NCBI GenBank assembly: GCA_002269645.1
Contig: NIVC01002239.1
Location: 220,325 to 284,324, forward strand
Source: Macrostomum lignano
Taxonomy: Eukaryota
Reading direction: 5' to 3'
Length of the DNA: 64,000 nt
The position numbers were made by a program, and so were the translations under genes. Within the stretch, counting starts at the first letter, position 1. Every line of letters starts with the position of its first letter. Positions 864 through 42,222 of this stretch are shown in pieces. The notes below the pieces were generated by a model. It searched no databases. It saw nothing but the letters and a program-made list of their open reading frames with translations, and had not been told where the DNA came from.

Positions 864-2231
864 CTATTCATCTTTGTCCTTTTCGAGCTCGTCGACTTCT
901 TCCTCCTCACCCTCGACGCTGTCAACGCCAACTTCTTCGTAATCCTTTTGCATGGACCCCAGGTCCTCCCGGGCCTCGGCGAACTCGCCCTCTTCCATGC
1001 CCTCGCCAACGTACCAGTGGACGAAGGCGCGCTTCGAATAAAGCAGATCGAACTTGTACGCCAGTCGGTCCCAGGCCTCTGCAATGGCGGTGGTGTTGCT
1101 CAGCATACAGACAGCGCGCGGCACCTTTGCCAGGTCCCCGCCTGGCACCGTGGTCGGCGGCTGATAGTTGATGCCCACCTTGAAGCCGGTGGGACACCAG
1201 TCAACAAACTGGATCTCACGCTTGCTCTTGATCTTCTGAATGGCTTCGTTCACGTCTTTCGATGAAACGTCACCGCGGTAAAGCAGACAGCAGGCCATGT
1301 ACTTTCCGTGCCGCGGATCGCACTTCACCATCTGATTGGAGGCCTCGAAGCAGGCGTTGGTAATCTCCTTCACTTTCAGTTGCTCATGGTGAGCCTTCTC
1401 GGTTGAGATAATTGGGGCGTACGTTGCTAGTGGGAAATGAATTTTCGGGTAAGGCACAAGGTTGGTTTGGAACTCGGTGATGTCAACATTGAGAGAGCCA
1501 TCGAAGCGAAGCGACACCGTGATAGAGGAGACAATCTGACTGATAATGCGGTTCAAGTTTGTGTAGGTTGGCCGTTCAACGTCAAGGTTGCGCCGGCAGA
1601 TGTCGTATATGGCCTCGTTGTCAACCATGAAAGCGCAGTCCGAGTGTCGCAGGGTGCCGTGAGTGCATAGAATTGCGTTGAACGGTTCCACCACGGCTGT
1701 GGACACTTGGGGCGCCGGATAGACGGCAAACTGCAGCTTCGCTCGCTTTCCGTACTCAGAAGAGAGCTTGTCCATGAGCAGCGAGGTGAAGCCGGCTCCA
1801 GTGCCACCGCCGAACGAGTGAAACACCAGAAAGCCCTGCAGGCCGGCGCAGTTCTCCGCTACTCGGTTGATGACCTCGCGAACGCTGCTCACGACTTCTT
1901 TGCCGATGGTGTAGTGGCCGCGTGCGTAGTTGTTCGCTGCATCCTCCTTGCCAGTGATGAGCTGCTCCGGGTGAAACAACTGCCGGTAGGTGCCGGAGCG
2001 CACCTCGTCAAGGACGGTCGGCTCCAGGTCAACAAAGACAGTCCGAGGCACGTAGTGACCGGAGCTGGTCTCCGAGAAAAATGCGTTGTAAGAGTCGTCG
2101 CACTTCTCTCTACCAGCGGAAGCCATCAGGCCGTCTGGTTGGATACCATGCTCTAAGCAATAAAGCTCCCAGCACGCGTTGCCAATCTGCACTCCCGCTT
2201 GGCCAACGTGTATGGAGATGCACTCGCGCAT
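864..2231 (-). CDS. TUBA: Alpha-tubulin, intronless, divergent (455 aa)
   Basis: [29 protein letters not shown] start, GGGTGAG tubulin signature, [17 protein letters not shown]-terminus; single uninterrupted ORF. Confidence 0.98.
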
Positions 2232-6634: not shown

Positions 6635-9600
6635 ATGGGCCTTCTGCGACTCTGTCTGGAGACGTTTATCGAGCGCACCTCCATGCGAGGCTTCCGGGGC
6701 TTCTACCGCGCACCCGTGACCGGCCTCCGGGTGCTCTGGCTGGTCTACCTCATCTCCATGGCAACGCTGCTGCTCAGCAGCGTCTACTACTTGGTGTTTG
6801 AATACCTGGACTATCACGTGACCGTGCAAGAGAGTGATCGAGTACAGCACGTAACGCCGTTGCCCGCCATCTGCGAGTGCAGCCAGGGTCCCATCGGGTT
6901 CGCCGCGGCGGGACTCTGGCAGTCCGGCCGAGTGAACTCGCCGGGTCAGCTCAACCAGGTGACGCAAGCTATGGGTCAGGAGGGAAACAACAGCTGCGCG
7001 AGAAACCCTTGGTGTCATTTTTTAGCAATCATAAGCATCGGACTCTCGCTTAGAAGCAGCCAAAAGACATAAAATTTAGACTTTTCGTTCGAAATGTATC
7101 CAAAAAGATCCAAGTTTAGAGTTTCTGTTCACCATGTGCAATAAAACCAGTCGATGTTTATGGGACTGGGTCATAATAAAACAAGAACCCTACACCAGTG
7201 AATCCAGATTCCTCACTACAACGGCGAAAAATTTCCGATGCCGATAAAACTTGAAGCTCTGGTCTGAGTTTTTTTCAAGTGAAATACTATGACACAATGC
7301 TTACACTCAGGGAAAATTTATGGTTTACAACAAACACACTTCGCTGCTGCTCATTTCAATAGGAGTTGCGCGCCAGCATGCTGAGCGCTTACTGGGCCGG
7401 CAACCTGCCCGCCGCCAAGGAGCTGTTCTTCACGGACAAGCTGTCCACGTACTTCCAGAACCTGGGCGTGGACGAGGCTCGTTCAGTCGGCTTGCGACCG
7501 GAGGAGATGGTGCTGCTGTGTTTGATTCGCCACTCCAAGAACAACAACCATCTGTGAGCCACGACGAGACCTGCCGGATGACCATTTAGCTGGTGCGGCA
7601 CCCGCTGTACCTGAACTGCTACGACATTGCCATTGATGAGTCCGACTCGCCTCAGGTGGGAAACAAATTTCTCTGGGTAGCGCTTTGTTATTATTGAAGG
7701 CGGTGCGGTGTTTACCTTCAAGCAGGGCTTTGAAGGCACCATGCGGACGTGTGGCTCCTGTTCCAAACCCAAATGTCAAACCTTGTTTTAGCTAAAATAA
7801 TTATGGAAAAACTCGCTAACGTCCTACCTAGGTGGGTTGAAAGTAACTTCGTAGCCATGGGTTTACTTGATCCAGGTGCGCGTATTGTGGGATGAATAAT
7901 TTTGACCTTTATGAAGTTAACTAGGATTTCACAAACAAGTGGTGCTAACACGCCATTTGTGCTGGCTCGTACTTCATGGAAGCGCGCGCACAGTAGACAT
8001 AGTTTAGTGTTAAACAGACTATCGGGAATTGAGGCGTAGCACTTGACTTGGAACAGCACACGAAAGCGATTCGTGTGAACAAATTAACAGAGGGTATTAC
8101 TGGGCTCTAGTTCAGTTATGCGAAAAAATTTCTGTTAGAATTAAGATCCTACGACCCTATCGATCGATTATCATTGGTGAACGTCTCATGCTATAAATTA
8201 TCGTTATGATTCGTGTCAGGTGAGCTCCGTCGTCTCTCTGGTGCAGCAGTCCGGTGACCTTCTCAAGCCGCAGGGTGATGAGGATGCAGACAGCGGCTCA
8301 GGAAGCAGCAGCACAGACAGCAATGGCCAGCAAGAAGCAGAGCACTTCCGGACCCACGTGCATGACGTGTTCACCCAGGCGCTGGGCATGCGGGTGACGT
8401 TGCACGAGCCCGGAACGCATCCGGACAACGACAGGCACGGCGTCAGCGTTGGTCTTCAGCAGAACTCGGAGCTGCGTTATCGTCTTGTTCAACGGCGACG
8501 GCTCAGCGTTGGCGGTCGCAGCTCGGACGATGCGGAGTCAGTCGAACTGTCCGGAGGCTGCAGTCCGGAAACTCCGGAGAGGCAACTGCGTGACTTTGAT
8601 CAGGTGTACCGGTACACATTCACTGGCTGCATGAGCGAAGCCATCGGCCGGCTCATTCTTGCTGAATGCGGCTGCGTGTCGGCCTTTCACCTGGTCGCCA
8701 GCCCGCCGAATGCCACGCATCCGTTCTGTCACTTGCACGACCAGTTTCTGGGGCGACGGCTGAACTGCGTCCGGGACATCCTGCTGCCCACCCGGATAGC
8801 GAAGCTTCGCTCGCAGCACTGCCCACAGAGGTGCAACTTCAACCGCTACGAGCTGCAGGCGAGCTCAGCCCGCTGGAAACCTTCGGCTTCACAACTGCGT
8901 CTGGCATTGAATGTCACGCATTCCTGGGAGGTGCTGGCGAGTCAAAACGTCAGGTACAGCCACCGCGAGGCGGCAGATCGGACTCTGGAGACCTACCTTA
9001 GCACGAAACGAAAATCTGCGATGAGGTGAGAGATGCTTCTACGAGTATATTGTTTACCTGAATAGCCTGCTGGCTGACGCCGGCACCCCGGACACTGCCG
9101 GTGGCGCGGCCTTTGTTCGCGCCCAAGCCATGAAGCGCGCCCAAGCCATGAAGCGCGCCCTGTGACGCTGACTTTTGCCATCCTGACAGCGTATTTTGTT
9201 GTTGTTGTTGTTACCTGAATAATTTGAAAGCAATAAGCTGAATAACAATAAACAAAAAATTGCATTGCATTTACTCTACGATTGCTATGCTGCGATCAGA
9301 GCCTCTCAACAGAGCAGCAGTGATGAGGCGGAGCGCAAGCAGCGGCTGAAGCTGAAGAAGCTGACCCTGGTGACTGTGAGCCGTAGCTCATACGACACTC
9401 TCTTGCGCACGGAGGTTCTGCAGATCACGCTGCCGGCACTGCTGGCTCGAATCGGCGGCCTCGGCTCGCTGACCATCGGCTGCACCCTGGCGGTGGCCTT
9501 TGAACTCATCGAGCTGGTCTGCCTGACGGCGATGCGGTCGCGAGAGACGAGAGGTCAGAAGCAGATGAACCTGCGGCGAAGGTCTGGTCCGCTACCCAGC

Positions 9601-14890: not shown

Positions 14891-16107
14891 GACTGGGCCA
14901 CCTCCATCTTTTCAGATCCTAAATTTCAGGCCCATCGCCACCTTCAGATCCTCTTTATGGGCCCATACTCCACAGAGACCTCAGTTGGACTTTCCAATAG
15001 TATGCTTCAGCTCTCAGCGTCATTTGAAAAGTACAGTCCAGTTTTTATTTTCTAAGAAACCTTGTTTATCGCAGAGCTTATCTCAGTAAAAAACCTTATT
15101 ACCAATACTGTATATTATTATTGATGCATAATGCATAACTAACTAGTACATAGCACCAAACTTTGTATTTGCTTCAGGTCATTATCATTTCGCACTCATT
15201 GATGAGAGCCATCAGCTCCAACTCCAGCATCAACTTCTACATCATCTAGCTTTTTAGCGGTGTGAAAGAGCCTTTACGCTTTTGCACTGTTTTGCGCTGT
15301 GCCGGTCAAGCTTCAAATTAACCAATACGAAACTGCCGCTCAACATTTGAATGCCGGTTGCCGGTGCCCGGTTTATTTACTGAACGGAAAGAGCTACATC
15401 TAGGTCGATAATCTAGTAGTAGTAGATCTAAGCAATATGATAAACTTGATCAGAAGAATTCTAACTGCTAGATGCTAAATAAAAACTACTCGTACTATTA
15501 GTAGTTAAAAAGATAATATTGTAATAATAACCATAAAGAGATACAACCATTGCGAACTATTGTTGTATAAAGCTGGAGCGAATGCGGAATCATAAAAGCT
15601 GGGAGTAAATCATTCGTTATGATTTGTGAACAACCAGAATGAGGGCAAGGACTTCTAGGCTAGAAGGACGCTGCACTCGGCATGCCAGCGGGAGAAGTTG
15701 GTATTATTTAATTTATTAATTTTTCTCGTAAACGCGAGTTTCTTTCCGAACAAACGCCTATAATTCAGCAAATTCTCAAACATCTGCGAGTGCAGCGCCC
15801 TGGGTGCAGTGCAGTCAGCGACATCCTTAGTGGCTCTTGAATTGACTGTGAATAACTATTTGTTGCACTTCACTGCTTGTAAAATGTTAATAATTATAAA
15901 TAGGGTTAAAGCATGTTACCAACACTGATTGCGTGAATGAGACTAGCTAAACGTCTAGCTGAACTTTCTAAAAAGTGCAAAAATTATAGCGAAAATCTGC
16001 CAGCTCTAGGTGGCGAAGTACAGGATGAAAGATGACAAAACTAAAATGAATCCGTGTCTGAATCAGTTCTGCAATCTGATTGCAGAATTTTATCATTGAT
16101 TATCCCT

Positions 16108-16232
16108 GACTCCCAAAGTGGCTCCCCTGACACACAGAGTGGCTCCCCTGACACCCAGGGTGGCTCCCCCTGACACCCAGAGTGGCTCCCTGACACACAG
16201 AGTGGCTCCCTGACACACAGAGTGGCTCCCCC
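16108..16232. repeat. ~21-bp tandem repeat (cagagtggctccctgacaca) downstream of the ATRR-like stop
   Basis: 5-6 direct copies. Confidence 0.85.
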
Positions 16233-16332: not shown

Positions 16333-19300
16333 TCAAATCGGTGCCTCCCGAGGCTCCACCAGGATCTCGTTGACGCCCACGTGCGGCGGCTGCTGCACAG
16401 CGTACAGAATCGCCCTGGCGACGTCCTCCGGCTCAAGCATGGTGTACTTGCCCTGCCCGCTGAACTCCTTGTGCGCTTCCGAATCCGCGTCGTCCCGGCA
16501 GGCCTGCAGTTGAGCAAAGGAGATGCGGGTCATCGGGGTCGGAGCGGAGAATTGAGATAAGTGGATGGAGTTGAATTTTAGCATTAAAGCCATTCTTTTC
16601 TCTGTGGCGAAAATACAGCAGCGAAATTATCAACACAACCGGCGAGAGGCATTGCTGCCCATTCCGCCGACTCCCCGAGCAGGCACACAAGCGCGCGGAT
16701 ACGTACGCAGTCATACGCGCAGACACACCCTCACACAGGAGTGTACAGCGGCCCTGAGTTTCTAATCTTCAGGCATGTACACTTCACTGTGCCCTGGGGG
16801 TTGGCCCTCAAGGGTGTTAATTCCACGAGTAGAGCCAAGCCGATATTCCAGTTTAGCCCCAAATTAATGTGACCACACTTGGAATCGAGCCCGGGCCGCT
16901 GGCACATCAGAGTGACTGGGGAATTGCGACCGATGAACGCTAATCAAAATACGCTTGTTCAGCACTTCCTAGCTCCCATTGTCCCTTTCGGAAGATAGAA
17001 GCTTCACAAAATAGGAAATTTCATATCAACGAACAATCTACCGAAGAACTCTCTATAGCTTAACAGTAACGTTTATTTGCCATTTCGTGCTTTTGAAGTC
17101 TCGAGCAAATGAAAGGGCCGGAAAGTCTTTTTCGAGCTTGTGAAACGCTCTCTACCGTCCCTCTACAGTCATCACAGTAGGCACTCTGACTCAGCTTGCG
17201 AGGGAAAACCTGCCAGCCAGAATGAGAAGCATTAGAAATCCAGTGCCTCTTGTTCTCAAAACCTGCTCACCTGCAGCGGAGTTCTCACGTCCCCGGGCTG
17301 CACGCAGGTGACGCGAAGGCCTCGACTCGCCACCTCGAGGCGCAGGGCCCTGGAGTAGCCTTCCACGAAGAATTTGGAGCCCGTGTACACGGCCAAGCCC
17401 GGAAACGGAGCCCGACCAGCGTCGCTGCTCAAGTTGACGATGTGGCCGCCACCCCTGTCCAGCATGATGGGCAGCACGGCCTCCACCGTGTGCACCAGGC
17501 CTCGGCAGTTGACGTCGATGGTGCGGTCGGTGAGGTGCGTCAGGCCGCTGAACGCCCTGGTATAGTACATCACCCCGGCGCTGTTCACCAGGATGTCCGG
17601 CTGGCCGAGCAGCGACCGGCAGCGCGCCACGGCGGCCTCGACCTCGGCGCGGGAGGTCACGTCGGCTGGGCAGGCGACCGCCACGCCCTGCGCAGCCAGA
17701 ATGCCTTGGCGCACCTGCTCCAGCTGGTCAGCGCGCCTGGCAACCAGCGCCACCTGGCAGCCGTCTCTAGCCAGGGCCTGCGCTACCGCCTGTGGTTGTT
17801 GGGAAACAGGGACTTTTGTGCATGACTTCGGACAGCAAGCTCACTAGATGCAGGATGTTGTCTTCTTAATGCAACAATTGAAACCTCGGGATTCACATGG
17901 CGGACGGAAATTGTTGAACAATTATTGAGCTTTTCCCATTTAATTCTGAATGCGCTTTGGGACCAGGTGGAAGCTTTTTTACGGAAGAGAAATTATGGAT
18001 AGATTTTAATTCGCTAATGGCGGACATCCAAAATACATTCTACTATACTTCGACGCTTTTAATTGTACAATTCTCTATTGACCTCTCATTCACTTGCAAT
18101 ACAGTGAGGTTCTGTTCGCACCTGTCCGATTCCGCTGCTGGCCCCGGTAACCATGGCAACCTTGCCTAGCAACGCTCCGCCGGAGGTGTTTCTCCTGGCC
18201 CGCGGCAGGAGGCCCCGCTCGGCCAGGCGGGCCACGTACACGGCCAGCAGGCTGGACTCGATGGCCGGATATCCGCTCTCCAAGCCCAGGCTGGGCAGAG
18301 CAGCACGCAGCTGCCTCGAGTCAAAGGTGCTGAGCTGCCCAAAGTACTGGGATCCGCCAGACGGGGCCAGCTCCTCCAACAGGCGCAGCAGCGATGCGAT
18401 TGGCTGGCAGGCCTCAGCTAGTTGCCGCAGCTCCACCAGCCAATCAGCGTAGTCCACGCGGCGCAAGGTATAGCCGCTAACCGACAACCAATCGCAGAGC
18501 AGGTCAAAGCTGATTGGCTGCGGATTAACCAGGTGAAAAATCTTGCCAGCGTGCAGGCTGAGCTGGGCCATGGCGCGCACGATGACCTCGCTGGTAAAGT
18601 CTACCGGAGTGAACTCCAAGCGCCAGTTGAGACGGGGCGCCTGCCCACTGCGTAGCACACCCTGAAAGTCGGTGAGTAGCAAAAAGTGCTTAGTAAGTGT
18701 TCTTTCAGGAACTGCACCAGTACGCACAGCCACTCGGCAAGATAACTATGTCCATTGATACCCCCGTGGGTCCACAGCAGCAACCAACCTGCAGCATGAG
18801 CAGCGTCAGGTCCTGCGGGTTCCAGGCGGCGTTGGCCCGGTCCCCGGCTTGGTTGCCCAGCCGGTACACGATCACCGGCATGCCTCGGGCCCGAGCCTTC
18901 ATGAGCAGCTGCTCGGCCACCCATTTGGTCTGGCTGTATCCGTCGGCGAGTTCTTGAGCGTGGACGCTGGTGTCGGCGTCCTCGCGGCAGTCGGCCAGAC
19001 CGTTCGGAAACACAGCGTCGGTGCTGACATAGTGCACTGGCTTGACGCGGACCGCTGACGCAAACAGGATCACGTTCTGCGTGCCCAGCACGTTCGGTCC
19101 GTACAGAGCCTGTGAATGGTCGGAATTCAGTGCACTTTTTCTGGTTTTGTCGGTCTGTGAGTGACTGCAGAGGGCTAGCAGAGCAACTAGCATGCGCTAA
19201 AACAGCAAATAAGGAGAGTCCCTCACCGTGTACGGGTAAATAAGGTTTACGTAGGCACCAGCGTGAATCACTACGTCGATCTCGCTGCTCAGGAAGGCGT

Positions 19301-22300
19301 AGTCATCCTCTGAGAGGCCGAACTTCACCAGGCTGAGGTCTCCTGCGAATGGCGTCAGTTTTTAACAATGAGAATTGCAGTTTTCTTAGAAAACAGGTCT
19401 TGACTTCGCCAGCTTCGCCCTGATTTGCCGACACCAGGATAGGAGAAACTCTGAGGCTTCTTATATGTCTGAAATTCCCTACAGGTAGGTCGGGTTGCCC
19501 AAAACTCCAATGCGAACTTTGCAACCAGCAGCGCACTCACCCCTAATAACGGTCACCCGGGCTTCAAAAGCAGCCGCAAGGTCCTTTGTTTGATCATCCT
19601 CCTGTCCTTTGGGCCGCAAGATGAGGAACTGCTCTAGGGTAGATCTCAGCCTCCGCTGCAGGCCCCCAGGGTCGCCGCTTCCGGTCTCGCGAACCAAACA
19701 GAAGACTTGCGTTTCGGTGAGGCGCAGCAGGTCGCGCAACAGGAAGGCGCCAAGGAAGCCAGTAGCGCCGGTTAGAAGGACGCGGCCGCGGGACCAGCGC
19801 GACTTGTTGAAGTGCGGGTTGCGCCAGAATGCGCGCAGCTGGATATCCAGGCTGCCGAATGATTTGGCATGTGAGATTGGGTTAGGCACAATACTGACAT
19901 TGTCGCGACTTTCCTATTCATTTCTTAGTTCACCTTCACTTGTCTCTGTTTACTCTGTTTTCTCTCTCTCTCTCTGTCTAGCTCAATCTTGTTATTCTTA
20001 TCTCTCTTTCCCTTACTGCCTTCTGATTGGCTCTCCATTCTCGCCTCTCTCTTCAGTCGCGCACTCCACTCCCTCTCCTTATTATTCTGGGCTCAACCCC
20101 CCAAAGTTAAATGTTCAATAAATATATCGGTTTGGGCCCTGCGCCCACTTACTGGCTCCTTTAGTATTCAATTTAACATCTAATTTAGTTCTAGTGTTTT
20201 TAGTTTTATTTTCTCTACAGGCATAAAACAGGCAGGTAGGCAGATTCCAACGGCTCACTCTGAAGCCTGCGGCTGGTCATGATTGGCCACCTCGGTTTTC
20301 AAATCGAAGGTTCTCGCCTCGGCCTCCGGCGTTTCGTCGGCGGTCCCAGTGCCCCGCGCCGCCGCAGCGTCGATCAGGCGGGCCATCTCCTGCACCGTGG
20401 GGTATTGGAACAGCTCCTTCACGGACAGCTGGCAGCCCAGCTGCTCGTTCACCTTTGAGAGCAGCTTTGTCGCTAGCAGGGAGTGGCTGGAAAACGGCGA
20501 TGGTTTGGCTGCTGTGGACTGGGATTTGCCTGCGAACTTGGGTCTTTCTGCTTTGGAAAATTAAAGCAAACTGAGATCATTTTGCCCTGATCTGTTCAAA
20601 ATACAAATCTTCGAAAAAATGACCTACAGTTGCTATACGAAGTCAGCCTATCTTACCCGCCGTAGTCGAAGAAGCTCTCCTGTATGTCGATCTCCTTGAT
20701 GTCCAGTGTAGCCATCCAGATGGCCGCCAGGCTTTTCTCTGTGGCGGTCTGCGGCAGAAACGAGCAGTCCAGGCTCTCTTGGGCCTTGTCGAAGGGAGGC
20801 AGCGAGGCCTTGTCCAGCTTGCCGATCGCGCTTACGGGCAGGCTACGATGGGTGGGTAGTAAAATTTAATGACATAGGTACTGCACTGCAACTCTGTGGC
20901 TGCTCATGGTTAGCACGTTCATGTGAGCAGGCTTCCTAAGTATTCTACACAGAATCGCACTCAGACAGGGGCTCACTCGGCCAGGAAGACGAAGTAGCTT
21001 GGGATCATGTAGAACGGCAGCTTTCGTTTCAGAGCGGATCGCAGCTGCCTTTTTGTGAGGTCGCCGTTCGATGGAACAACGTACGCCACAAGGAACTTGT
21101 CCTCGCCTTCGCCGCCCTTCACCAGCACCACACAGGCGTTGACGAGCCCACTGTCCAGCAGGGCCACCTCGATCGCCTGAACCTCCACGGAGTAGCCCCG
21201 GATTTTGACCATACTGTCGCAGCGACCGCAGATCTCCAGGCTGCTGTCCGAGAGCAGGTAGCCCCAGTCGCCTGTGCGGTACAGCCGCTCACCCGCCTGG
21301 CTGCCGAGGGCTTTCGGCGCCTGAATGAACTTGCTGCGATTCAGGTCTGGGCGCTTCACGTAGCCTTTGGCCAGGGTTGGCCCGGCCACGTAGATCTGCG
21401 ATCGAGCGGAAATGGGTTTGACAGATATACGAATGCAAGTAGTCAGTCTCGGTTCAGGGTTTTTGTCATTTTTGGTCGAAACTCTATAGTAATATTGAAT
21501 TACCTCTACCGGTCCCCAACTTTTGAACGGAACTCTTACCTCTCCAGCCGCCCCCACCGGCTGCGGATTGAGCGCTTCGTCTAAGATGACCACCTGGACT
21601 CCTGGTAGCAGCCAGCCCACGGGGCAGAACTTGCGTCGTTCCTCCGGTCTGTGCTGAATCCGCTTCAGGTAGTCCGTAAGATCTCTGGCGGCCACGTCGT
21701 GACACTCGGAGATACTGTACAGGTTGATGACGCGGGTGCTGGGCAGCATTGACTGACAGCGCTCCAAGAGGCTTGTGGTAACCACCTCGCCGCAAAGCCA
21801 GATTTGCCTGTAAATGTTTTGGTGTTTCAAAGTCGCTGCCATACAATCTGGGATCATGGAACGGTGTAATGTCTATTCATTATGGAGGTATAGAAACATA
21901 GAAAATTTAGGACAAAATTTTAGTACGAACTTGAGGCTCGCGCAAGCCTCTTGAACTCTTTCCGCCTCCGAATCAAGCACCGTCTCCAGCAATGACGGCG
22001 TGAACAGCATCCGGGTGATGCAGTTTTTCCGCATATACTCCAGCAGCTTTGGTGGATCGTAGATGACATCATCGGGCACCACATAAAGGCATTGACCCTT
22101 CATCAACGGACGCAGCATCTCCCATACAAAGAAAACGTTACAGGCTTCGCGCTCCGGTCCGTTGGACTCGTCATAAGGGTAAGTCACGTGACGCCAGTGG
22201 TAGGAAAAGACAGCACCGCGGTGCGGCATGCCGATGCCTTTCGGCTTGCCGGTGGTGCCGCTGGAGTATACGATGAAGGCGAGGGCGTCCAGATCGATGG

Positions 22301-23150
22301 AGACGGGGACGCAGCTGGTGTCGCATCGCAGCTCATTGAGTTCCTGTTGCCAGTGGTCAGAGAAGACCCACGCAAGGCTGCGCGCTGATTCAGGCAAGCG
22401 CTGTAGCAGGTCGGGCTTTGTCAGCACAGCACGAGGCTCAGCATCGGACAGGACGCTCTCGATTAGCGAGTCGGGGTAGGACAAGTCCATGGGGAGGTAG
22501 GCTCCACCTGCGAATGCGACATGGGCATTTAACAATAGTAACTTCTTTCAGACCTTTCGATGTGTCTGATTTTACACGTACGTCTTCTACACCTACGGTA
22601 GCACAGCAAAGCAAGCTAAAAAACCGTTAAAGGTTTTGCGACAACTATTTTCACTACGTCATATTCCTGCTCGCGACGACGCAGCAGGCTTTGTAAGCTT
22701 GCGCTGCTTGACCCCAGCTGCTTCATGTAGTCTGTCAGTTACACTGAAAAAAACGCTTTCCATATTTGGGCCTGCCTAGACCATCCCACCCTGGTCTTAA
22801 ATCTTTCGTCAGCTTCAACTGATAATGCACTCGCGGTCATCAAATCCGTATGGAGAATAAAAGACGAGTAACTGACCGGCTTTGAGTATGGCAATGTAAG
22901 CCAGCACATACTCGATGCATCTCTCCATGTAAATGATGCCGCAGAGCTCCACATCCAGACCCTTCAGCCGGAGCTCGGCGGCCAGTTTGCTGGACAGTTG
23001 ATCCAGCTCCGCGTAGGTGAGTTGCCGTCCAGCTCCGTCCGAAACGGCGACTCGGTCTGGAGTCAGTTGAGCTTGCCTGCAGAACTGCTCGTGCAGGCTC
23101 CCCGCAGTTTGGTAGGACTCGGCTGCTGCTGCTGCTACTGGCGACGGCAT
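16333..23150 (-). CDS. NRPS-like A-T-R-SDR enzyme (~1309 aa, 12 exons), similar to fungal ATRR glycine betaine reductase
   Basis: Exons 23150-22877, 22507-21931, 21807-21540, 21395-20977, 20842-20657, 20486-20259, 19851-19541, 19342-19227, 19109-18789, 18661-18122, 17789-17271, 16503-16333 (3930 nt, all GT-AG, phases consistent). A domain: YSSGTTGKPKG, ACNVFFVWE, YRTGD, GRCDSMVKIRGYSVE, GKLDK. T domain: FFDYGGHSL. R domain: TGATGFLG, YSQTK. SDR: TGASSGIG, NSAG, YTGSK. Ends VNEILVEPREAPI. Confidence 0.93.
16625..16950 (-). mobile_element. Interspersed repeat, probable tRNA-derived SINE (family B), in ATRR-like intron 11
   Basis: Body 16625-16812 matches the reverse complement of 57262-57460; B-box-like gggctcgattcc (16881-16892) and A-box-like tagcgttcatcgg upstream on the minus strand. 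Confidence 0.6.
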
Positions 23151-34762: not shown

Positions 34763-37700
34763 ATGGCTGGAGATGATGATGAGGAGCTCAACAGTGCCGC
34801 AGAGGTGTACTCCTGTTTCCGCCACATCGAGCTGTTGCCAGGCGCCAAGCCTCATCCTGGCAACGTGGTTGAGTCTGACTGCCTAGCAACCGTCGACCTG
34901 CCGCCCGCTGTGTTCCCCCTGGCCGACTCGCTGCCCAGTGAGGCCGTCACCGAGGGCCGGCTGAGCTCCCTGCAGCTGCAGGGCGTGCTGTACGCCTGCC
35001 AGCGCCACCGGACTCTGCTGCCTGGCGGCGAGCGGGCCGGCTTCTTCATCGGGGATGCCGCGGGAGTCGGCAAGGTAACTGTGGGAGAAATTGTCGAGCT
35101 GAGCTCAATGAGGCGTGCCTGAGTCGGAGTCTAGGATTTGTTTTGTTGATGATTTTTCGAGTTGGAATAATGGGATTTAGATTAAGGCAGTGGACTCCGG
35201 TTGGGGAGCTGACTCGTACGAGTGTGGCCCAAAGGCGTGCGTTCTGCCACCCCCTCCCCACTCTGTGGCCACTCTTGGCCGATGCGAGGTGTATTTTGTT
35301 GTTGTATTGCAGTTGGGATGACGAGACTAGTTTGCATGACGGGACTCTAGTTTGCATGACGGGACTCTAGTTTGCATGACGGGACTCTAGTTTGCATGAC
35401 GGGACTCTAGATGGGATGGCGGGACTAGTTGGGATGAAAGGATTTGAGTTCGTCGGAGGGGAAGCCAGTATTAGTTCTGAAGCCAATCAAAGCAGTCAGT
35501 CGGGCTGATCCGCCTCCGCAGGGCCGCCAGATTGCGGCGATAATCCTGGACAGTCTGGCCCGGGGCCGGCCGCGCCACCTGTGGCTGAGTGTGTCGCCAG
35601 ACCTCGCCCAGGACGCCAGGCGGGACCTGTTGGCCATCGGCTGCCATGCCCGCGTCATCGACGGCTGCCGGCAGCTGGACCGGTCGGCCACGGCGTTCGG
35701 CCTGGCCAAGGACTGCCGCGAGGGCGTCCTGTTCAACACCTACGCCTGTCTGGTGTCGGGCGGCTCCGGCGCCAGCCGCAAGACCCGCCTTGAGCAGCTT
35801 ATCGACTGGTGCTCCGGCGACTCGGCGCCAGCCAAATTCGACGGCTGTCTCGTGCTGGACGAGTGCCACCGCGCCAAGCACTTCCTGCCGGACGCCAAGG
35901 AGGCCGCCAACTCCAAGGTAGCTGCGGCTGTCATTGAACTGCAGCAGCGGCTGCCGCTGGCACGAGTGGTTAGTGAGCTTCTGGAATCCCTGAACTGGCA
36001 CTGAGAATCTCCCTGAACTGGCATTGAAAATCTCCCTGAACTGGCACTGAGAATATACCTGAACTGGCACTGAGAAAATACCTGAACTGGCACTGAGAAT
36101 ATACCTGAACTGGCACTGAGAATATACCTGAACTGGCACTGAGAATCTCCCTGAACTGGCACTGAGAATATACCTGAACTGGCACTGAAAATCTCCCTAA
36201 ACTGGCACTGAGAATCTCCCTGAACTGGCACTGAGAATCTCCCTGAACTGGCACTGAGAATCTCCCTGAACTGGCACTGAGAATATACCTGAACTGGCAC
36301 TGAGAATCTCCCTGAACTGGCACTGAGAATATACCTGAACTGGCACTGAGAATATACCTGAACTGGCACTGAGAATATACCTGAACTGGCACTGAGAATA
36401 TACCTGAACTGGCACTGAGAATATACCTGAACTGGCACTGAGAATATACCTGAACTGGCACTGAGAATATACCTGAACTGGCACTGAGAATCTCCCTGAA
36501 CTGGCACTGAGAATATACCTGAACTGGCACTGAAAATCTGCCTGAACTGGCACTGAAAATCTCCCTAAACTGGCACTGAAAATCTCCCTAAACTGGCACT
36601 GAAAATCTCCCTAAACTGGCACTGAAAATCTCCCTGAACTGGCACTGAAAATCTCCCTAAACTGGCACTGAAAATCTCCCTAAACTGGCACTGGAATCCC
36701 ACAAACTTCGCCGACACCCCAGGTGTACTGCAGCGCCACAGGTGTATCGGAGCTGAAAAACCTGGCCTACATGACCCGGCTTGGCCTGTGGGGCCCCAGC
36801 CGCCCCTTCGCCAGCTTCCAGGATTTCCGCGGCCTGTTGGAGCGCCGCGGCCTGGCTGCAGCGGAGATGCTGGCCGCCGAGCTGAAGGCCACTGGCGTGT
36901 ACGTGGCCCGCGGCCTGTCCTTCCGGGACGCCGAGTTCGCCATTGTGGACGCGCCGCTCACGACCGGCGACATTGCGCTGTATGACTCCGCGGCTGCTCT
37001 GTGGCGACGAGTGAGCACTGGGGTGGGACGGGGCCCGACTCAGTGTCATGTCATGTCTTATATCATTTCATTGATGTCTAATGTCATTTCACTAATTTCT
37101 AATGTCATTCCACTGATGCCTAATGTCATTTTACTGATGCCTAATGTCATTCCACTGGTGCCTAATGTCATTCCACTTCCACTGATGCCTGATGTCATTC
37201 CACTGGTGCCTAATGTCATTCCACTTCCACTGGTGCCTGATGTCATTCCATTGATGCCTGATGTCATTCCACTGATGCCTGATGTCATTCCACTGATGCC
37301 TGATGTCATTCCATTGATGCCTGATGTCATTCCACTGGTGCCTAATGTCATTCCACTTCCACTGGTGCCTGATGTCATTCCATTGATGCCTGATGTCATT
37401 CCACTGGTGCCTAATGTCACTCTGTCGAAGAAAATTTTCGCGCCGTTAATTCCCAGCGTCACTTCGCTGATGCCCAATGCCATTTAATCTTTACAAAATA
37501 TCGCTTCAATTGAGTCAAATGTTATTCCACTTGCGCCTAATGTCACTCCAATCTCCCCCGCCCCCGCAGATTCACTCCAGCCTGCTCCGCGCCTGCTCCC
37601 TGTGCCGAGTTCGCTCTCCAGGCCAGCACCTGCGCAGCTACTGGTCCGCCCACCAGCGCTTTTTCCTGCAGCTCTGCCTGTCGCTGCGGGTGCCCGCCGT

Positions 37701-40700
37701 GCTGGCTGAGGCCAAGCGGGCCCTGGACATCGGCCTCTGCCCTGTGCTGGGCCTGCAGAGCACCGGAGAAGCCGGCCTGCACGCCTCCGCCGATCTGCAG
37801 TCGCCCTCCGGCTTCGTGTCGGTTTGTCGACACGTGTGCCGGCAGTTCCTGCTGTCGCACTTCCCCGCCGTGTCCACCCTGACTGGCCAGCCCGAGACCT
37901 GGAGCAGCGGCGAGAGACAGCGCCTGCTGGACGAGCTGGAGGCCTGCGAGCTGCCGGCCGGGGGACTCGACCTGCTCATTGACGGCCTTGGGGGGCCTGA
38001 CGATGTGGCAGAAATGACAGGTAGTAGAAACTTGGGGTTTTCATATGTAATTAGTCCTGTGCGATTCTGTGGGAGAATCAGGATCTCATCTGGTGTCTGA
38101 TTGGCCCTGTGGGAGAATCGGGATCCCATCTGGTGTCTGATTGGCCCTGTGGGAGAATCGGGATCTCACCTGGTGTCTGATTGGCCCTGTGCAGGCCGGC
38201 GCAGCCGCATCATCCGCTGCAAGGGCCGCGGCGGCTTTCGCCTGGAGAGCCGGTACGCGGAGAGCGGCGATGCGCAGAGCGTGAACGCCAGCGAGCGGCA
38301 GCGCTTCATGGCGGGCCAGAAGCTGGCGGCCGTCATCTCGGATGCGGCCTCCACCGGCATCAGTCTGCACGCCGACCCTGGCTGTGCCAACACCCGCCGG
38401 CGGGTGCACGTGACCGCCGAGCTGCCCTGGTCTGCCGAGAAAGCGGTGAGGCCCGATGCACTGTAGTCTGAATGCCGATCCTAATTAGAAAGCATGCAGG
38501 ATTTTGTGAATATCCCATTGGGTAGCTTTGTGAATATCCCATTGGGTAGCTTTGTGAATATCCCATTGGGTAGCTTTGTGAATATCCCATTGGGTAGCTT
38601 TGTGAATATCCCATTGGGTAGCTTTGTGAATATCCCATTGGGTAGCTTTGTGAATATCCCATTGGGTAGCTTTGTGAATATCCCATTGGGTAGCTTTGTG
38701 AATATCCCATTGGGTAGCTTTGTGAATATCCCATTGGGTAGCTTTGTGAATATCCCATTGGGTAGCTTTGTGAATATCCCATTGGGTAGCTTTGTGAATA
38801 TCCCATTGGGTAGCTTTGTGAATATCCCATTGGGTAGCTTTGTGAATATCCCATTGGGTAGCTTTGTGAATATCCCATTGGGTAGCTTTGTGAATATCCC
38901 ATTGGGTAGCTTTGTGAATATCCCATTGGGTAGCTTTGTGAATATCCCATTGGGTAGCTTTGTGAATATCCCATTGGGTAGCTTTGTGAATATCCCATTG
39001 GGTAGCTTTGTGAATATCCCATTGGGTAGCTTTGTGAATATCCCATTGGGTAGCTTTGTGAATATCCCATTGGGTAGCTTTGTGAATATCCCATTGGGTA
39101 GCTTTGTGAATATCCCATTGGGTAGCTTTGTGAATATCCCATTGGGTAGCTTTGTGAATATCCCATTGGGTAGCTTTGTAAATATCCCATTTGGATGGTA
39201 ATCTATTGTCGTTCCTTTTTGGTATTTCTCAGTCACATTTGGGATAATAAATATGGGATTTGTATCTGCAACAGCTCGGTCATTCCTGAGCATCCCAAAT
39301 CCCAACTCAGGTGCAGCAGCTGGGCCGCACGCACCGCTCAGGCCAGTCCAGCGGCCCCGTCTACCGCCTGGTCTGCCTGGACCTGGCCGGCGAGCGCCGC
39401 TTCTGCTCCGGTGTTGCCAAGCGGCTGCAGACTCTGGGCGCCCTGACCAAGGCCGACCGGCGGGCCGCCCTGGTTGGCGACCTCGGCCACCTCAACTGTG
39501 ACACCGGCCGCGGCAGGGCGGCCCTGCGCCGGCTGTATCAGTACACTGCGGCCGGCCGCCTGCTGCGGGGCGTAAGCCTGCCGGAGGTCTTCGACGGCGA
39601 GGTCTCGACTGAGCAGGAGGGCGTGCGGGTGAGCATACAGGAGGAGTCATGTTTGAGAGGCATGAAGTTGGGAGTTGGGAGAGTCATGGCTAATGTGAGA
39701 GTCATGGCTCAGGTGAGAGTCATGGCTCAGGTGTTGAAGGCATAGCTCAGGTGAGAGTCATGGCTAAGGTGAGAGTTATGGCTCAGGTGTTGAAGGCATA
39801 GCTCAGGTGAGAGTCATGGCTAAGGTGAGAGTTATGGCTCAGGTGAGAGTCATGGCTCAGGTGTTGAAGGCATAGCTCAGGTGAGAGTCATGGCTCAGGT
39901 AGGAGAGTCATGGCTAAGGTGAGAGTCATGGCTCAGGTGAGAATCATGGCTCAGGTGTTGAAGGCATAGCTCAGGTGAGAGTCATGGCTAAGGTGAGAGT
40001 GAGTCATTGCTCAGGTGAGAGTCATGGCTAAGGTGAGAGTCATGGCTAAGGTGTGAAAGGCATAGCTCAGGTGAGAGTCATTGCTCAGGTAGGAGAGTCA
40101 TGGCTAAGGTGAGAGTCATGGCTCAGGTGAGAATCATGGCTCAGGTGTTGAAGGCATAGCTCAGGTGAGAGTCATGGCTAAGGTGAGAGTGAGTCATTGC
40201 TCAGGTGAGAGTCATGGCTAAGGTGAGAGTCATGGCTAAGGTGTGAAAGGCATAGCTCAGGTGAGAGTCATTGCTCAGGTAGGAGAGTCATGGCTCAGGT
40301 GAGAGTCATGGCTCAGGTGAGAGTCATGGCTCAGGTGAGAGTCATGGCTCAGGTGAGAGTCATGGCTCAGAGTCACCAGAGAAGAATCCGAACTTTCCGT
40401 TAACTTTACGAGCTCGTAATTTGAAACGCCGCTCCCACCTTGGCCCCGCAGCGGCTGCAGGCCTGCCTGCTGGACATGGACATCTTCGAGCGCCTTGCCG
40501 AGCCCAGCGGCAAGTGTCGCCTCCGCGATGGCGAGACGGGCTCGGTGAATCGCTTCCTGAACAGGCTGCTGGGGCTGCCGGTGGCTGAGCAGGCCTGTCT
40601 GTTCCGCTACTTTCTGGCCGCCTGCGGGCTCGAGCCCGCGCCCGGCTTTGGTGAGCGACCTGCACTGACTGCTGCTCCCATTCCCTGTCTTCCCATCTTC

Positions 40701-42222
40701 CCATCCATCTCCCCTATCTTCCCACCCATCTCCCCTATCTTCCCACCCATCTCCTCTATCTTCCCATCCATCTCCTCTATCTTCCCACCCATCTCCCCTA
40801 TCTTCCCACTCATCTCCCCTATCTTCCCATCCATCTCCTCTATCTTCCCACCCATCTCCTCTATCTTCCCACCCATCTCCCCTATCTTCCCACCCATCTC
40901 CTCTATCTTCCCACCCATCTCCTCTATCTTCCCACCCATCTCCCCTATCTTCCCACCCATCTCCTCTATCTTCCCATCCATCTCCTCTATCTTCCCACCC
41001 ATCTCCTCTATCTTCCCATCCATCTCCTCTATCTTCCCACCCATCTCCTCTATCTTCCCACCCATCTCCCTATCTTCCCACCCATCTCCTCTATCTTCCC
41101 ACCCATCTCCCCTATCTTCCCATCCATCCCATCTGTCTTCAAATCCTGTCTTCATGTCCTCCATTTCTTCCAGTATGAAAGTTTTGTGACGAATAGAAAG
41201 TCTATTCGTCCATGCACCTATGCGAGTGCGAGCTCTCCCTCCCCATCGCCAGCACTCGAATTCCCAAATCCCCTCCCGCAGGCCCCGCAGACGCCGCTTC
41301 TCCCAGCTCACCTCTGGCGGCATCGGCGACAGCAGACGACGACTGCCTGGCGGAGCTGCGCGCCGACTCCATCCGGCTGGTGTCGCCGCCAGCCGAGGCG
41401 TTTCAGCAGAGCTGCCTGCCGGCCGGCCTGCTGTCCCGCCAGGTCACCGCCGTCACCCTGGAGATCACCAGGAGGCTGCGGCGCCGGCAGCCTCACCAGA
41501 GCCAGCAGCGGACTCCGCAGCGCACAGTGACTGAGCGGCTCACCCTGCTCTGCGGCTCCGTGCTGCCGCTGCTGCCCGCGCTGGAGGCCTGCCTGGCCGC
41601 CAACTGGGCCGCCCTGCGAGGCCTGCCCGCCTCTCGTCGTCGCCTGCGGTTCCTGCGAGCCCGCGTCGACGCCGATAGCGAAGCCGACCCCGACGCCGCT
41701 GGCGGCAGCCGTCGGTTTGTTGGCCTCCGATTCCCCGCTGCGCTGCTGCGGGCCGCCGAGGCGGAGCTGGGGCGCCGGCGGCTGCTGGCCCAGCAGGCGG
41801 AGGCCGCCTCTGGACCGACGGCAGCTTCAGCGGCGGCCGGCGCAGCGAAGGAGGAGGCTGTGGCGCCGGTAGACGAGCGGCTGAAGCGCCGGGCAACCAC
41901 GGCACCGCCAACCATTCGAAGCTTTTTCGCTCCGGCGGCCGCTGCGCCTTCACCTTCGCCCTCGCCAGTTCATGCCGCGGCGGCCAGCAAGCGGAAGAGC
42001 TGTGGAGCAGCGGCGGCCGCCCCCAGCCCGGCCAAGCAGGCCCGCATCAGCGACCTGTTCGCCGCCAGGCAGCCGGACGAGTCGGTCTGCCCGAACTGCG
42101 ACAAGCAGCTGCCGGCCTCCGTGCGGCCCCGGGACCACTGGGCCGTCTGCCTCGTTGTGGGGGCCAGCGGCCCGGCCGGTGCGGAACCAAAGCAAGAGAA
42201 ACTGGACAGAGATGCAGCTTAG
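34763..42222 (+). CDS. SBNO: Strawberry notch (SBNO/sno family) SF2 helicase-like protein (~1068 aa, 8 exons) with C-terminal PIP-like motifs and UBZ-type finger
   Basis: Exons 34763-35074, 35522-35968, 36723-37010, 37570-38020, 38195-38445, 39311-39628, 40452-40650, 41282-42222, phases consistent. Motifs GFFIGDAAGVGKGRQIA, DECHRAK, RVVYCSATG, YWSAHQRFF, GLQSTGEA, ELPWSAEKAVQQLGRTHRS, RFLNRLLGL. The 5' start may be preceded by another exon. Confidence 0.93.
35326..35412. repeat. SBNO intron 1: 20-bp tandem (tttgcatgacgggactctag) x~4
   Basis: Direct copies. Confidence 0.9.
35988..36692. repeat. SBNO intron 2: 23-bp minisatellite (cctgaactggcactgagaat(ata/ctc)) x~30
   Basis: Direct copies. 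Confidence 0.97.
37045..37420. repeat. SBNO intron 3: 21-bp minisatellite (gtcattccactgatgcctaat) with variants
   Basis: Direct copies. Confidence 0.93.
38071..38190. repeat. SBNO intron 4: 40-bp unit x3 abutting the acceptor
   Basis: gggagaatc(a/g)ggatc..tggtgtctgattggccctgt at 38071, 38111 and 38151, followed by gcag and exon 5. Confidence 0.95.
38500..39192. repeat. SBNO intron 5: near-perfect 24-bp minisatellite (tttgtgaatatcccattgggtagc) x~29
   Basis: Essentially identical units. Confidence 0.98.
39680..40370. repeat. SBNO intron 6: 18-bp minisatellite (gtgagagtcatggctcag) with higher-order variants
   Basis: Direct copies; junctions read CAG/GTGAG. Confidence 0.95.
40690..41130. repeat. 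SBNO intron 7: 21-bp pyrimidine-rich minisatellite (cccacccatctcctctatctt)
   Basis: Direct copies. Confidence 0.95.

What the first reader, a model, noticed from the sequence alone, without database searches (positions are those of the whole stretch)
16333..23150. Animal-encoded, fully spliced A-T-R-SDR NRPS-like enzyme (ATRR-type glycine betaine reductase)
Seen: an intact 12-exon, ~1309-aa gene with adenylation, thiolation (GGHSL), thioester reductase and a second SDR reductase domain, with catalytic motifs present in all four. Known: this architecture defines fungal ATRR (Aspergillus nidulans), which adenylates glycine betaine and reduces it in two 2-electron steps to choline. As I recall them, the ACNVFFxWE A-domain segment and the VNExLxEPR..PI terminus match that family. 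It differs from Ebony/schistosome NRPS (no R domains) and from Lys2 (no second SDR). Inference: this animal can reverse choline oxidation and recycle the osmolyte betaine into choline, a route not part of textbook animal metabolism. Homologues may already be in databases, but function in an animal would be new to me.
Basis: partly seen in the sequence, partly recalled or inferred. Interest (0 to 1): 0.9.

Follow-up and report, generated by a model that had tools for sequence, protein, structure and literature searches.

The report
Flatworm betaine-to-choline reductase gene (ATRR)
This is an intact 12-exon gene of the flatworm Macrostomum lignano for an ATRR-type enzyme, which most likely reduces the osmolyte glycine betaine back to choline; such genes were already known in invertebrates, so it is a sound but unsurprising find.

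Summary
On the minus strand, 23150 to 16333, there are 12 exons with 11 GT-AG introns. They encode 1309 aa that match GenBank PAA59715.1 of Macrostomum lignano residue for residue; that record is named only 'hypothetical protein'.

The domain order is adenylation, carrier, thioester reductase, then a YdfG-like SDR. All catalytic motifs are present. The substrate pocket keeps the betaine cage described for Aspergillus nidulans ATRR: Phe, Trp, Trp and an acidic residue, here Asp instead of Glu. Six of the ten specificity-code residues are identical to fungal ATRR.

In a tree the protein sits inside a 100%-supported animal clade within a 100%-supported ATRR clade. Six of its 11 introns share position and phase with the annelid Capitella orthologue. 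Its neighbours are animal genes. It is therefore a vertically inherited animal gene, not contamination.

The betaine-to-choline function is inferred, not shown. The novelty claim does not hold:
- Hai et al. 2019 already noted atrr genes in invertebrates.
- A 2024 paper studied nematode ATRR.
- A 2025 paper mentions the molluscan homologue.
- RefSeq already names the abalone and sea-anemone proteins 'glycine betaine reductase ATRR'.

A diatom homologue reported to make tryptophanol leaves some doubt about the substrate. Interest is low to moderate.

The parts
22877..23150 (-). Exon 1 (aa 1-91 plus 1 nt): start codon and N-terminal part of the adenylation domain, up to LKAG|G
   Evidence: The donor is GTCAGT. 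The intron position and phase (1) are shared with Capitella. The product matches PAA59715.1 exactly.
21931..22507 (-). Exon 2 (aa 92-283): adenylation core with the P-loop YSSGTTGKPKG and the pocket segment ACNVFFVWE (Val216, Phe217, Trp220, Leu259)
   Evidence: The downstream intron (phase 2) is shared with Capitella.
21540..21807 (-). Exon 3 (aa 284-373): pocket residues Trp287 and Cys289 (IWLCGEVV) and Leu313, Asp321, Val322 (NLYSISECHDV)
   Evidence: The downstream intron (phase 0) is shared with Capitella.
20977..21395 (-). Exon 4 (aa 374-512): adenylation motifs YRTGD and GRCDSMVKIRGYSVE, and the C-terminal subdomain
   Evidence: The downstream intron (phase 2) is shared with Capitella.
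20657..20842 (-). Exon 5 (aa 513-574): A10 motif GKLDK (Lys521) and the start of the carrier domain
   Evidence: The downstream intron (phase 2) is shared with Capitella.
20259..20486 (-). Exon 6 (aa 575-650): carrier (thiolation) domain with the phosphopantetheine-attachment Ser577 in GGHSL, followed by a linker
19541..19851 (-). Exon 7 (aa 651-754): start of thioester reductase R1, with the NADPH-binding motif TGATGFLG
19227..19342 (-). Exon 8 (aa 755-793): R1, segment GDLSLVKFGL...NLIYPYT
   Evidence: The downstream intron (phase 0) is shared with Capitella.
18789..19109 (-). Exon 9 (aa 794-900): R1 catalytic Tyr851/Lys855 (DGYSQTKW)
18122..18661 (-). Exon 10 (aa 901-1080): C-terminal part of R1, the R1-R2 linker, and the start of R2 with TGASSGIG
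17271..17789 (-). Exon 11 (aa 1081-1253): core of the R2 short-chain dehydrogenase, with NSAG, Ser1202, Tyr1215, Lys1219 and the PGDV motif
16333..16503 (-). Exon 12 (aa 1254-1309 plus stop): end of R2, ...VNEILVEPREAPI*
   Evidence: I chose the acceptor at 16503 over the alternative at 16599. It has the better pyrimidine tract and normal SDR spacing, and it is confirmed by the exact match to PAA59715.1.

Best explanation
This is the Macrostomum lignano orthologue of the NRPS-like glycine betaine reductase ATRR.

Proposed mechanism (inferred from the characterised A. nidulans enzyme, not shown here):
1. The adenylation domain binds glycine betaine. Its trimethylammonium head sits in an aromatic cage (Phe217, Trp220, Trp287) next to an acidic residue (Asp321). 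Lys521 and the P-loop serve adenylate formation.
2. The betainoyl group is transferred to the phosphopantetheine arm on Ser577 of the carrier domain. This requires a separate phosphopantetheinyl transferase.
3. R1, an extended-SDR thioester reductase with Tyr851/Lys855, uses NADPH to release glycine betaine aldehyde.
4. The fused YdfG-like SDR R2 (Ser1202/Tyr1215/Lys1219) uses a second NADPH to give choline.

The net cost is 1 ATP and 2 NADPH. The enzyme would let the worm turn stored or dietary betaine into choline for phosphatidylcholine or acetylcholine, and buffer its betaine pool.

What is shown: the gene structure, the domains, the motifs, the orthology and the animal origin. What is inferred: the substrate, the products and the physiological role.
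For: - The gene is intact and matches the deposited M. lignano protein exactly.
- Pfam gives the A-T-R1-R2 domain order.
- Every catalytic motif aligns with fungal ATRR.
- The specificity code of the window protein is VFWLWCLDVK; in all 8 fungal ATRRs examined it is VFWLWNCEIK. The mapping is validated because A. ellipticus and Paecilomyces carry F201, W204, W270 and E304 at exactly the published A. nidulans positions. It also reproduces the five differences reported for plant-parasitic nematode ATRR.
- Asp235 of amino-acid-activating domains is replaced by Val, as in ATRR.
- R2 is 50-54% identical to fungal R2, as close as it is to other animals.
- In an NJ tree with 100 bootstraps, the ATRR clade has 100% support and the animal clade 100%, with the window protein inside the animals.
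- Nematode MiATRR, from the same animal clade, relieved betaine toxicity in yeast.
- NCBI names the Haliotis and Nematostella orthologues 'glycine betaine reductase ATRR(-like)'.
Against: - There is no biochemical or expression evidence for this protein.
- Overall identity to the characterised fungal family is only 37-40%, and 38-41% in the A domain.
- Four code positions differ from the fungal enzyme: Asn to Cys, Cys to Leu, Glu to Asp, Ile to Val.
- The nearest non-animal relatives are stramenopile proteins at 45-46% identity. One of these, the diatom PtNRPS1, was reported to convert tryptophan to tryptophanol.
- The evidence for the nematode enzyme is indirect: yeast growth and RNAi phenotypes.
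Confidence: 0.7

Rival explanations
1. The chemistry is the same, but the preferred substrate is different. The enzyme would still reduce a carboxylic acid to an alcohol in two steps, but the animal and stramenopile branch would have shifted specificity. Candidates are another small onium acid common in marine invertebrates and their food (dimethylglycine, a sulfonium analogue, beta-alanine betaine, proline betaine) or an aromatic amino acid, as claimed for the diatom PtNRPS1.
For: - Four of ten code residues differ from fungal ATRR, including the acidic residue (Asp for Glu) and two residues lining the pocket.
- Position 299 varies widely among animals (W/L/I/V/M/H), and it is Thr in the one diatom aligned here.
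- PtNRPS1 has the same FFVW motif and was reported to bind Trp and produce tryptophanol.
- Animals are closer to stramenopiles (45-46%) than to fungi (37-40%).
Against: - The window protein keeps all three cage aromatics and an acidic residue, and it lacks the Asp235 that binds alpha-amino groups.
- The text of the diatom study that I read describes docking-selected aromatic candidates and mentions no test of glycine betaine.
- Marine metatranscriptome and isotope work links stramenopile atrr homologues to betaine-to-choline conversion.
- Fungal ATRR excluded longer betaines and neutral analogues.
- R2 is very similar to the betaine-aldehyde-reducing fungal R2.
Confidence: 0.22
2. The locus is a silent or decaying copy. 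M. lignano carries several near-identical copies, so this one could be unexpressed or functionally redundant.
For: - The protein cluster holds at least two full-length M. lignano versions (1309 and 1307 aa), a 447-aa fragment and a 1024-aa form.
- A mis-fused 1652-aa model also exists.
- Retroelement fragments lie in the same window.
Against: - The reading frame is fully open over 12 exons with canonical splice sites.
- All catalytic residues are intact.
- Identity to the other full-length copy is 99.5%, and the few substitutions avoid the catalytic motifs and pocket residues checked.
Confidence: 0.04
3. The gene is not truly animal. It would be contamination, or a recent horizontal transfer from a fungus or from the diatoms used as food.
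For: - The family is best known from fungi.
- From my own knowledge, not from a tool result: M. lignano is cultured on diatoms, which also carry homologues.
Against: - Six of 11 introns are at the same alignment column and phase as in the annelid Capitella teleta (binomial P about 1e-11).
- The protein sits inside a 100%-supported animal clade running from Placozoa to tunicates.
- Neighbours in the window are animal genes: a DEG/ENaC channel, a Cys-loop receptor, strawberry notch and tubulin.
- The protein matches one annotated on a 284-kb M. lignano contig.
Confidence: 0.01

Closest known systems
Aspergillus nidulans ATRR (AN5318), the NRPS-like glycine betaine reductase (Hai, Huang and Tang 2019, 10.1101/559534 / PNAS 116:10348)
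   Same: - It has the same four-domain order A-T-R1-R2, with a YdfG-like second reductase.
- Asp235 is lost.
- The cage residues are the same: Phe (code position 236), Trp (239), Trp (299), and an acidic residue at position 330.
- The catalytic Tyr of R1 and the Gly motif and Tyr of R2 are the same.
- The ACNVFFxWE segment and the VNExLxEPRxxPI terminus are shared.
- It falls in the same 100%-supported clade.
   Different: - Identity to fungal orthologues is only 37-40% overall; the T domain is 26-34%.
- The code differs at four positions: 301 Asn to Cys, 322 Cys to Leu, 330 Glu to Asp, 331 Ile to Val.
- The window gene has 11 introns in an animal genome.
- Its activity is untested.
Meloidogyne incognita MiATRR and other nematode ATRRs (Zhang et al. 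2024, PMC11050029)
   Same: It belongs to the same animal clade. Identity to the Heterodera, Bursaphelenchus, Brugia and Steinernema orthologues is 44-47%. The architecture is the same, and the code is the same at 9 of 10 positions.
   Different: The plant-parasitic forms have His or Ile at position 299, where the flatworm keeps the fungal Trp. The nematode work links the gene to plant parasitism, whereas M. lignano is free-living.
Metazoan 'glycine betaine reductase ATRR(-like)' proteins of RefSeq (e.g. Haliotis rufescens, Nematostella vectensis) and the 'molluscan glycine-betaine reductase homologue' mentioned in PMC11869996
   Same: These are orthologues with 50-53% identity over the full length and an identical or near-identical specificity code (VFWLWCLDVK or IFWLWCLDVK).
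   Different: None of them has been characterised biochemically. The M. lignano entries carry uninformative or wrong names ('hypothetical protein', 'Fatty acid synthase').
Phaeodactylum tricornutum PtNRPS1 (A-T-R1-R2; tryptophan to tryptophanol; PMC13194791)
   Same: The architecture is the same. It has the same N-x-F-F-V-W pocket motif and an acidic residue 34 residues after position 299. The stramenopile clade is sister to the animals in my tree, at 45-46% identity.
   Different: The reported substrate is an aromatic amino acid. PtNRPS1 has Phe285 where the flatworm and fungi have Trp, and the diatom Seminavis has Thr. I could not obtain the PtNRPS1 sequence itself.
Lys2 (alpha-aminoadipate reductase), bacterial carboxylic acid reductases, and Ebony
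   Same: All use adenylation followed by a carrier domain. Lys2 and the CARs also have a terminal thioester reductase.
   Different: - None of them has the second, fused SDR.
- The Lys2 equivalog model scores 404 bits against a cut-off of 1030.
- The CAR model scores 198 bits against a cut-off of 1300.
- From established knowledge, Ebony has no reductase domain at all.

Membership tests
ATRR (NRPS-like glycine betaine reductase) | A single polypeptide with the order adenylation, thiolation, thioester reductase (extended SDR), then a YdfG-like classical SDR | tested here: met
   Pfam: AMP-binding 25-385, AMP-binding_C 448-521, PP-binding 551-613, NAD_binding_4 677-927, adh_short 1067-1255. The best PDB match to the last domain is clavaldehyde dehydrogenase, a classical SDR.
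ATRR (NRPS-like glycine betaine reductase) | The A-domain pocket lacks Asp235 and carries the aromatic cage (AnATRR F201, W204, W270) plus a nearby acidic residue (E304) | tested here: met
   The window protein has Val216 at position 235, then Phe217, Trp220, Trp287 and Asp321. The alignment register was checked on fungal sequences that carry F201/W204/W270/E304 at the published numbers. The acidic residue is Asp, not Glu.
ATRR (NRPS-like glycine betaine reductase) | The full 10-residue specificity code of the characterised enzyme (VFWLWNCEIK in all 8 fungal orthologues examined) | tested here: inconclusive
   The window code is VFWLWCLDVK. Six residues are identical, two are conservative changes (E to D, I to V) and two are non-conservative (N to C, C to L). 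The effect on specificity is unknown.
ATRR (NRPS-like glycine betaine reductase) | Catalytic residues: phosphopantetheinyl Ser; R1 Tyr (AnATRR Y811); R2 Gly motif (G1036) and Tyr (Y1178) | tested here: met
   Ser577 in GGHSL; Tyr851/Lys855 in DGYSQTKW; Gly1073 in TGASSGIG; Ser1202/Tyr1215/Lys1219. The Gly-to-Tyr spacing is 142 residues, as in AnATRR.
ATRR (NRPS-like glycine betaine reductase) | Groups phylogenetically with characterised or named ATRRs, to the exclusion of other A-T-R enzymes | tested here: met
   NJ tree of A-T-R1 on 970 columns with 100 bootstraps. Animals, stramenopiles and fungi form a clade with 100% support against three bacterial A-T-R modules, and the window protein is inside the animal clade (100%). 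Limits: this is a distance method, there are few outgroups, and Lys2 and CAR sequences were not in the tree.
ATRR (NRPS-like glycine betaine reductase) | [quoted passage not shown] | not testable with these tools
   This needs enzyme assays or isotope tracing. Only the fungal enzyme has direct data. The nematode data are indirect.
Lys2 / alpha-aminoadipate reductase | Reaches the equivalog model TIGR03443, and has the A-T-R architecture without a second reductase | tested here: not met
   TIGR03443 scores 403.9 bits against a cut-off of 1030.1, and an extra adh_short domain is present.
Bacterial-type carboxylic acid reductase (CAR) | Reaches the equivalog model NF041592 | tested here: not met
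   198 bits against a cut-off of 1300. Only residues 558-1050 match.
PtNRPS1-type tryptophan reductase (diatoms) | A-T-R1-R2 architecture with a pocket said to be opened for aromatic substrates (Phe285 at code position 299, different Phe/Trp stacking) | tested here: inconclusive
   The architecture and the FFVW motif are shared. The window protein has Trp at position 299, as in fungi.

The most novel reading that the evidence does not exclude
ATRR is an ancestral metazoan gene. It is present from Placozoa and Cnidaria through acoels, flatworms, molluscs, annelids, some insects, nematodes, echinoderms, hemichordates and tunicates, with introns shared across phyla. No vertebrate appears among the best 120 hits.

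Its pocket differs from the fungal one at four code positions. On the novel reading, the animal branch has a substrate preference or physiological role that differs from fungal glycine betaine recycling. Examples would be another marine onium osmolyte, or a choline-salvage route that changes the dietary choline requirement of these animals.
Probability: 0.2. Interest if true: 0.55.

Novelty: new member of a known kind. Interest (0 to 1): 0.3.

Why it matters
If the inferred activity is real, this flatworm and most invertebrate phyla can run the choline-to-betaine pathway backwards at a cost of one ATP and two NADPH. That bears on osmolyte turnover, phosphatidylcholine and acetylcholine supply, and dietary choline needs in marine invertebrates.

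No animal ATRR has yet been characterised with purified enzyme. M. lignano is an experimentally tractable model, so it would be a convenient system for that first direct test.

The practical gain here is smaller. It corrects the database names ('hypothetical protein', 'Fatty acid synthase'), and it shows from intron conservation that the gene is vertically inherited in animals.

Tried and rejected
1. An alternative last acceptor at 16599 gives a 1341-aa product. I rejected it because the 16503 acceptor has the better pyrimidine tract and normal SDR spacing, and it matches the deposited protein exactly.
The run with the Nematostella protein was swamped by giant multi-module NRPSs whose scores add up, and it gave nothing useful.
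3. The PNAS version of Hai et al. (PMC6535007) is not held. The supplements of the nematode and diatom papers contain no sequences. I therefore reached fungal ATRR sequences indirectly: a metagenome scan gave a fungal-type locus, L001, and a homology search with it gave named fungal proteins. A. nidulans ATRR itself was not among the 120 listed, so I used close Aspergillus and Paecilomyces orthologues that carry the published residue numbers.
4. L019 from the metagenome scan looked like a full-length match. It is actually a bacterial NRPS module next to a separate SDR gene, so I discarded it.
5. A Biopython BLOSUM bootstrap timed out. I replaced it with a numpy Kimura-distance NJ bootstrap.
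6. The contamination or HGT hypothesis was rejected on intron sharing, phylogeny and neighbouring genes.
7. Assignment to Lys2 or CAR was rejected on NCBIfam cut-offs.
Full report
**1. The observation**

I read the sequence and listed stop-free stretches in the three minus-strand frames. I then joined them through canonical splice sites.

The result is 12 exons: 23150-22877, 22507-21931, 21807-21540, 21395-20977, 20842-20657, 20486-20259, 19851-19541, 19342-19227, 19109-18789, 18661-18122, 17789-17271 and 16503-16333. All 11 introns are GT..AG. The ATG is at 23150 and the stop codon ends at 16333.

For the last intron two in-frame acceptors exist. The one at 16503 has the better pyrimidine tract and gives normal SDR spacing.

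The model is identical from first to last residue to GenBank PAA59715.1 (BOX15_Mlig028061g1, 'hypothetical protein', Macrostomum lignano, on a 284-kb contig). UniProt auto-names the same protein 'Fatty acid synthase'. A second full-length copy of 1307 aa, 99.5% identical, and shorter fragments are also in the databases.

**2. What it encodes**

Pfam gives the following:
- AMP-binding, 25-385
- AMP-binding_C, 448-521
- PP-binding, 551-613
- NAD_binding_4, the thioester-reductase type, 677-927
- adh_short, 1067-1255

No ATRR structure has been solved. The nearest PDB chains are bacterial NRPS A-T modules, the MxaA terminal reductase for R1, and clavaldehyde dehydrogenase for R2.

The catalytic motifs are all present:
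- A domain: YSSGTTGKPKG, YRTGD, GRCDSMVKIRGYSVE and GKLDK (Lys521)
- Carrier: GGHSL (Ser577)
- R1: TGATGFLG and Tyr851/Lys855
- R2: TGASSGIG, NSAG and Ser1202/Tyr1215/Lys1219

**3. Whose gene it is**

The window is animal DNA. The best hits are M. lignano at 99-100% identity. Next come full-length matches of about 50% identity from scallop, corals, abalone, nemerteans, hemichordates, crickets and cockroaches, sea hares, Capitella, starfish, ascidians and Trichoplax. Matches of about 42-47% come from hemipteran insects, an acoel and many nematodes.

Other ORFs in the window encode a tubulin, a DEG/ENaC channel fragment, a Cys-loop receptor transmembrane region, strawberry-notch helicase exons and retroelement remnants.

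The strongest evidence comes from intron positions. I fetched the Capitella teleta orthologue with its genomic DNA and solved its 22 introns exactly. I then mapped them onto the protein alignment. Six of the 11 flatworm introns (after codons 91, 283, 373, 512, 574 and 793) fall at the same column and in the same phase as Capitella introns. The binomial P is about 1e-11. This rules out contamination and recent horizontal transfer, and it independently validates six of my splice junctions.

**4. Relation to the known family**

ATRR was defined in Aspergillus nidulans. It is an A-T-R1-R2 enzyme that adenylates glycine betaine, loads it on the carrier, reduces the thioester to betaine aldehyde at R1 (Y811), and reduces the aldehyde to choline at R2 (G1036, Y1178). 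Its A domain lacks Asp235 and has an aromatic cage (F201, W204, W270) next to E304.

I could not retrieve the A. nidulans sequence directly, so I took an indirect route:
- A metagenome scan gave a fungal-type locus, L001.
- A homology search with it returned named fungal orthologues, including Exophiala dermatitidis 'Glycine betaine reductase ATRR' and several Aspergillus proteins.
- The Aspergillus ellipticus and Paecilomyces proteins carry F201, F202, W204, W270 and E304 at exactly the published numbers. This fixes the register.

In PheA numbering (235, 236, 239, 278, 299, 301, 322, 330, 331, 517) the codes are:

| Group | Specificity code |
|---|---|
| All eight fungal proteins | VFWLWNCEIK |
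| Window protein | VFWLWCLDVK |
| Most animals | as the window, except at position 299 (W/L/I/V/M/H) |
| Diatom Seminavis | VFWLTCLDVK |

The mapping also reproduces the published statement that plant-parasitic nematode ATRRs differ from AnATRR at five positions, with one His/Ile-variable site.

The flatworm protein therefore keeps the whole cage and an acidic partner (Asp for Glu). It differs at 301, 322, 330 and 331.

Identity to fungal ATRRs is 37-40% overall: A domain 38-41%, T 26-34%, R1 33-37%, R2 50-54%. Identity to other animals is 44-52%, and to stramenopiles 45-46%.

In an NJ tree of A-T-R1 (970 columns, 100 bootstraps), fungi, stramenopiles and animals together form a clade with 100% support against three bacterial A-T-R modules. 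Animals are monophyletic (100%) with the window protein inside. Stramenopiles are their sister group.

The Lys2 and CAR equivalog models fall far below their cut-offs: 404 against 1030 bits, and 198 against 1300 bits.

**5. Most likely mechanism**

The proposed steps are:
1. Adenylation of glycine betaine in the Phe217/Trp220/Trp287/Asp321 pocket.
2. Thioesterification on the phosphopantetheine arm of Ser577.
3. NADPH-dependent reduction to betaine aldehyde at R1.
4. NADPH-dependent reduction to choline at R2.

The architecture, motifs, orthology and animal origin are shown. The substrate, product and physiological role are inferred. I put the probability at about 0.7.

The main rival, at about 0.2, is the same chemistry on a different substrate:
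- Four code residues differ from the fungal enzyme.
- The closest non-animal relatives are stramenopile enzymes.
- One of these, PtNRPS1, was reported to bind tryptophan and make tryptophanol.

Against that rival:
- The sections of the diatom study that I read describe docking-selected aromatic candidates and mention no test of glycine betaine.
- Isotope and metatranscriptome work in the ocean ties stramenopile atrr homologues to betaine-to-choline conversion.
- The flatworm has the fungal Trp at position 299, where PtNRPS1 has Phe.
- Nematode MiATRR, from the same animal clade, rescued yeast from betaine toxicity.

A silent copy or a contaminant are both very unlikely.

**6. Novelty**

- Zhang et al. 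2024 described ATRR across nematodes and tested MiATRR.
- RefSeq already names the abalone and sea-anemone proteins accordingly.

What this analysis adds:
- The M. lignano entry, named only 'hypothetical protein' or 'Fatty acid synthase', is an ATRR orthologue with the complete cage.
- The gene is old in animals, as shown by shared introns and a monophyletic animal clade from Placozoa to tunicates.
- No paper in the searched library links M. lignano to such enzymes.
- No animal ATRR has been assayed as a purified enzyme in what I read.

I rate it a new member of a known kind, with interest about 0.3.

Noticed in passing
window 16104-16231: A tandem repeat lies about 100 bp downstream of the ATRR stop codon, in the 3' flank on the minus strand. 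The units are 20-21 nt (or a 42-nt double unit), with about 6 copies and 86-89% matches. The consensus is CCCTGACACACAGAGTGGCTC.
   Followed up: partly
window 864-2231 (-): An uninterrupted 455-aa ORF encodes a complete tubulin (Tubulin plus Tubulin_C domains, E 7e-59 and 1e-51). It appears to be intronless.
   Followed up: no
window 8220-9029 (+) and 50350-52632 (+): There are exons of two animal ion-channel genes. One is a DEG/ENaC (amiloride-sensitive sodium channel) fragment. The other is a Cys-loop receptor transmembrane region, which sits at the end of a 760-aa, 68% GC, low-complexity ORF.
   Followed up: no
window 36723-37487 (+) and 40440-41189 (+): Exons of a strawberry-notch-type helicase (AAA_34 at E 5e-32; Helicase_C_4 at 25.8 bits, below its 30.5-bit Pfam cut-off). 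This is another typical animal gene, about 13 kb from ATRR.
   Followed up: no
window 43037-44215 (-) and 61143-62216 (-): Retroelement remnants: an RNase H ORF and an integrase ORF (Integrase_H2C2 plus rve).
   Followed up: no
P0118 / P0042, Capitella teleta, both listed with a longest contig of 91,660 bp: Capitella has a second, shorter paralogue with A-T-R1 only and no R2. Its pocket has changed (IFYMICMDVK, with NMYGATE in place of NLYSISE), which suggests a duplicate with a new substrate. It may be a tandem neighbour of the full ATRR.
   Followed up: partly
alignment column of window residue Trp287 (code position 299): The third cage residue is not fixed in animals. It is Trp in the flatworm, corals, abalone, ascidian and Steinernema. 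It is Leu, Ile, Val, Met or His in scallop, Capitella, starfish, Trichoplax, an acoel, filarial worms and plant-parasitic nematodes. This could tune specificity.
   Followed up: partly
M. lignano protein cluster (P0001, P0002, P0391-P0394): M. lignano has several near-identical copies or alleles of the gene: 1309 aa, 1307 aa, a 447-aa R2-only fragment and a 1024-aa form. There is also a 1652-aa model that looks like a mis-fusion with upstream low-complexity sequence. UniProt's automatic name 'Fatty acid synthase' is misleading.
   Followed up: partly
L001 (metagenome contig Ga0068621_1000233) 2953-6432: A fungal-type ATRR gene was recovered from a JGI metagenome. It is 90% identical to P0271, with an intron interrupting R2 after ...TQTEDW. 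I used it only as a stepping stone to named fungal sequences.
   Followed up: partly
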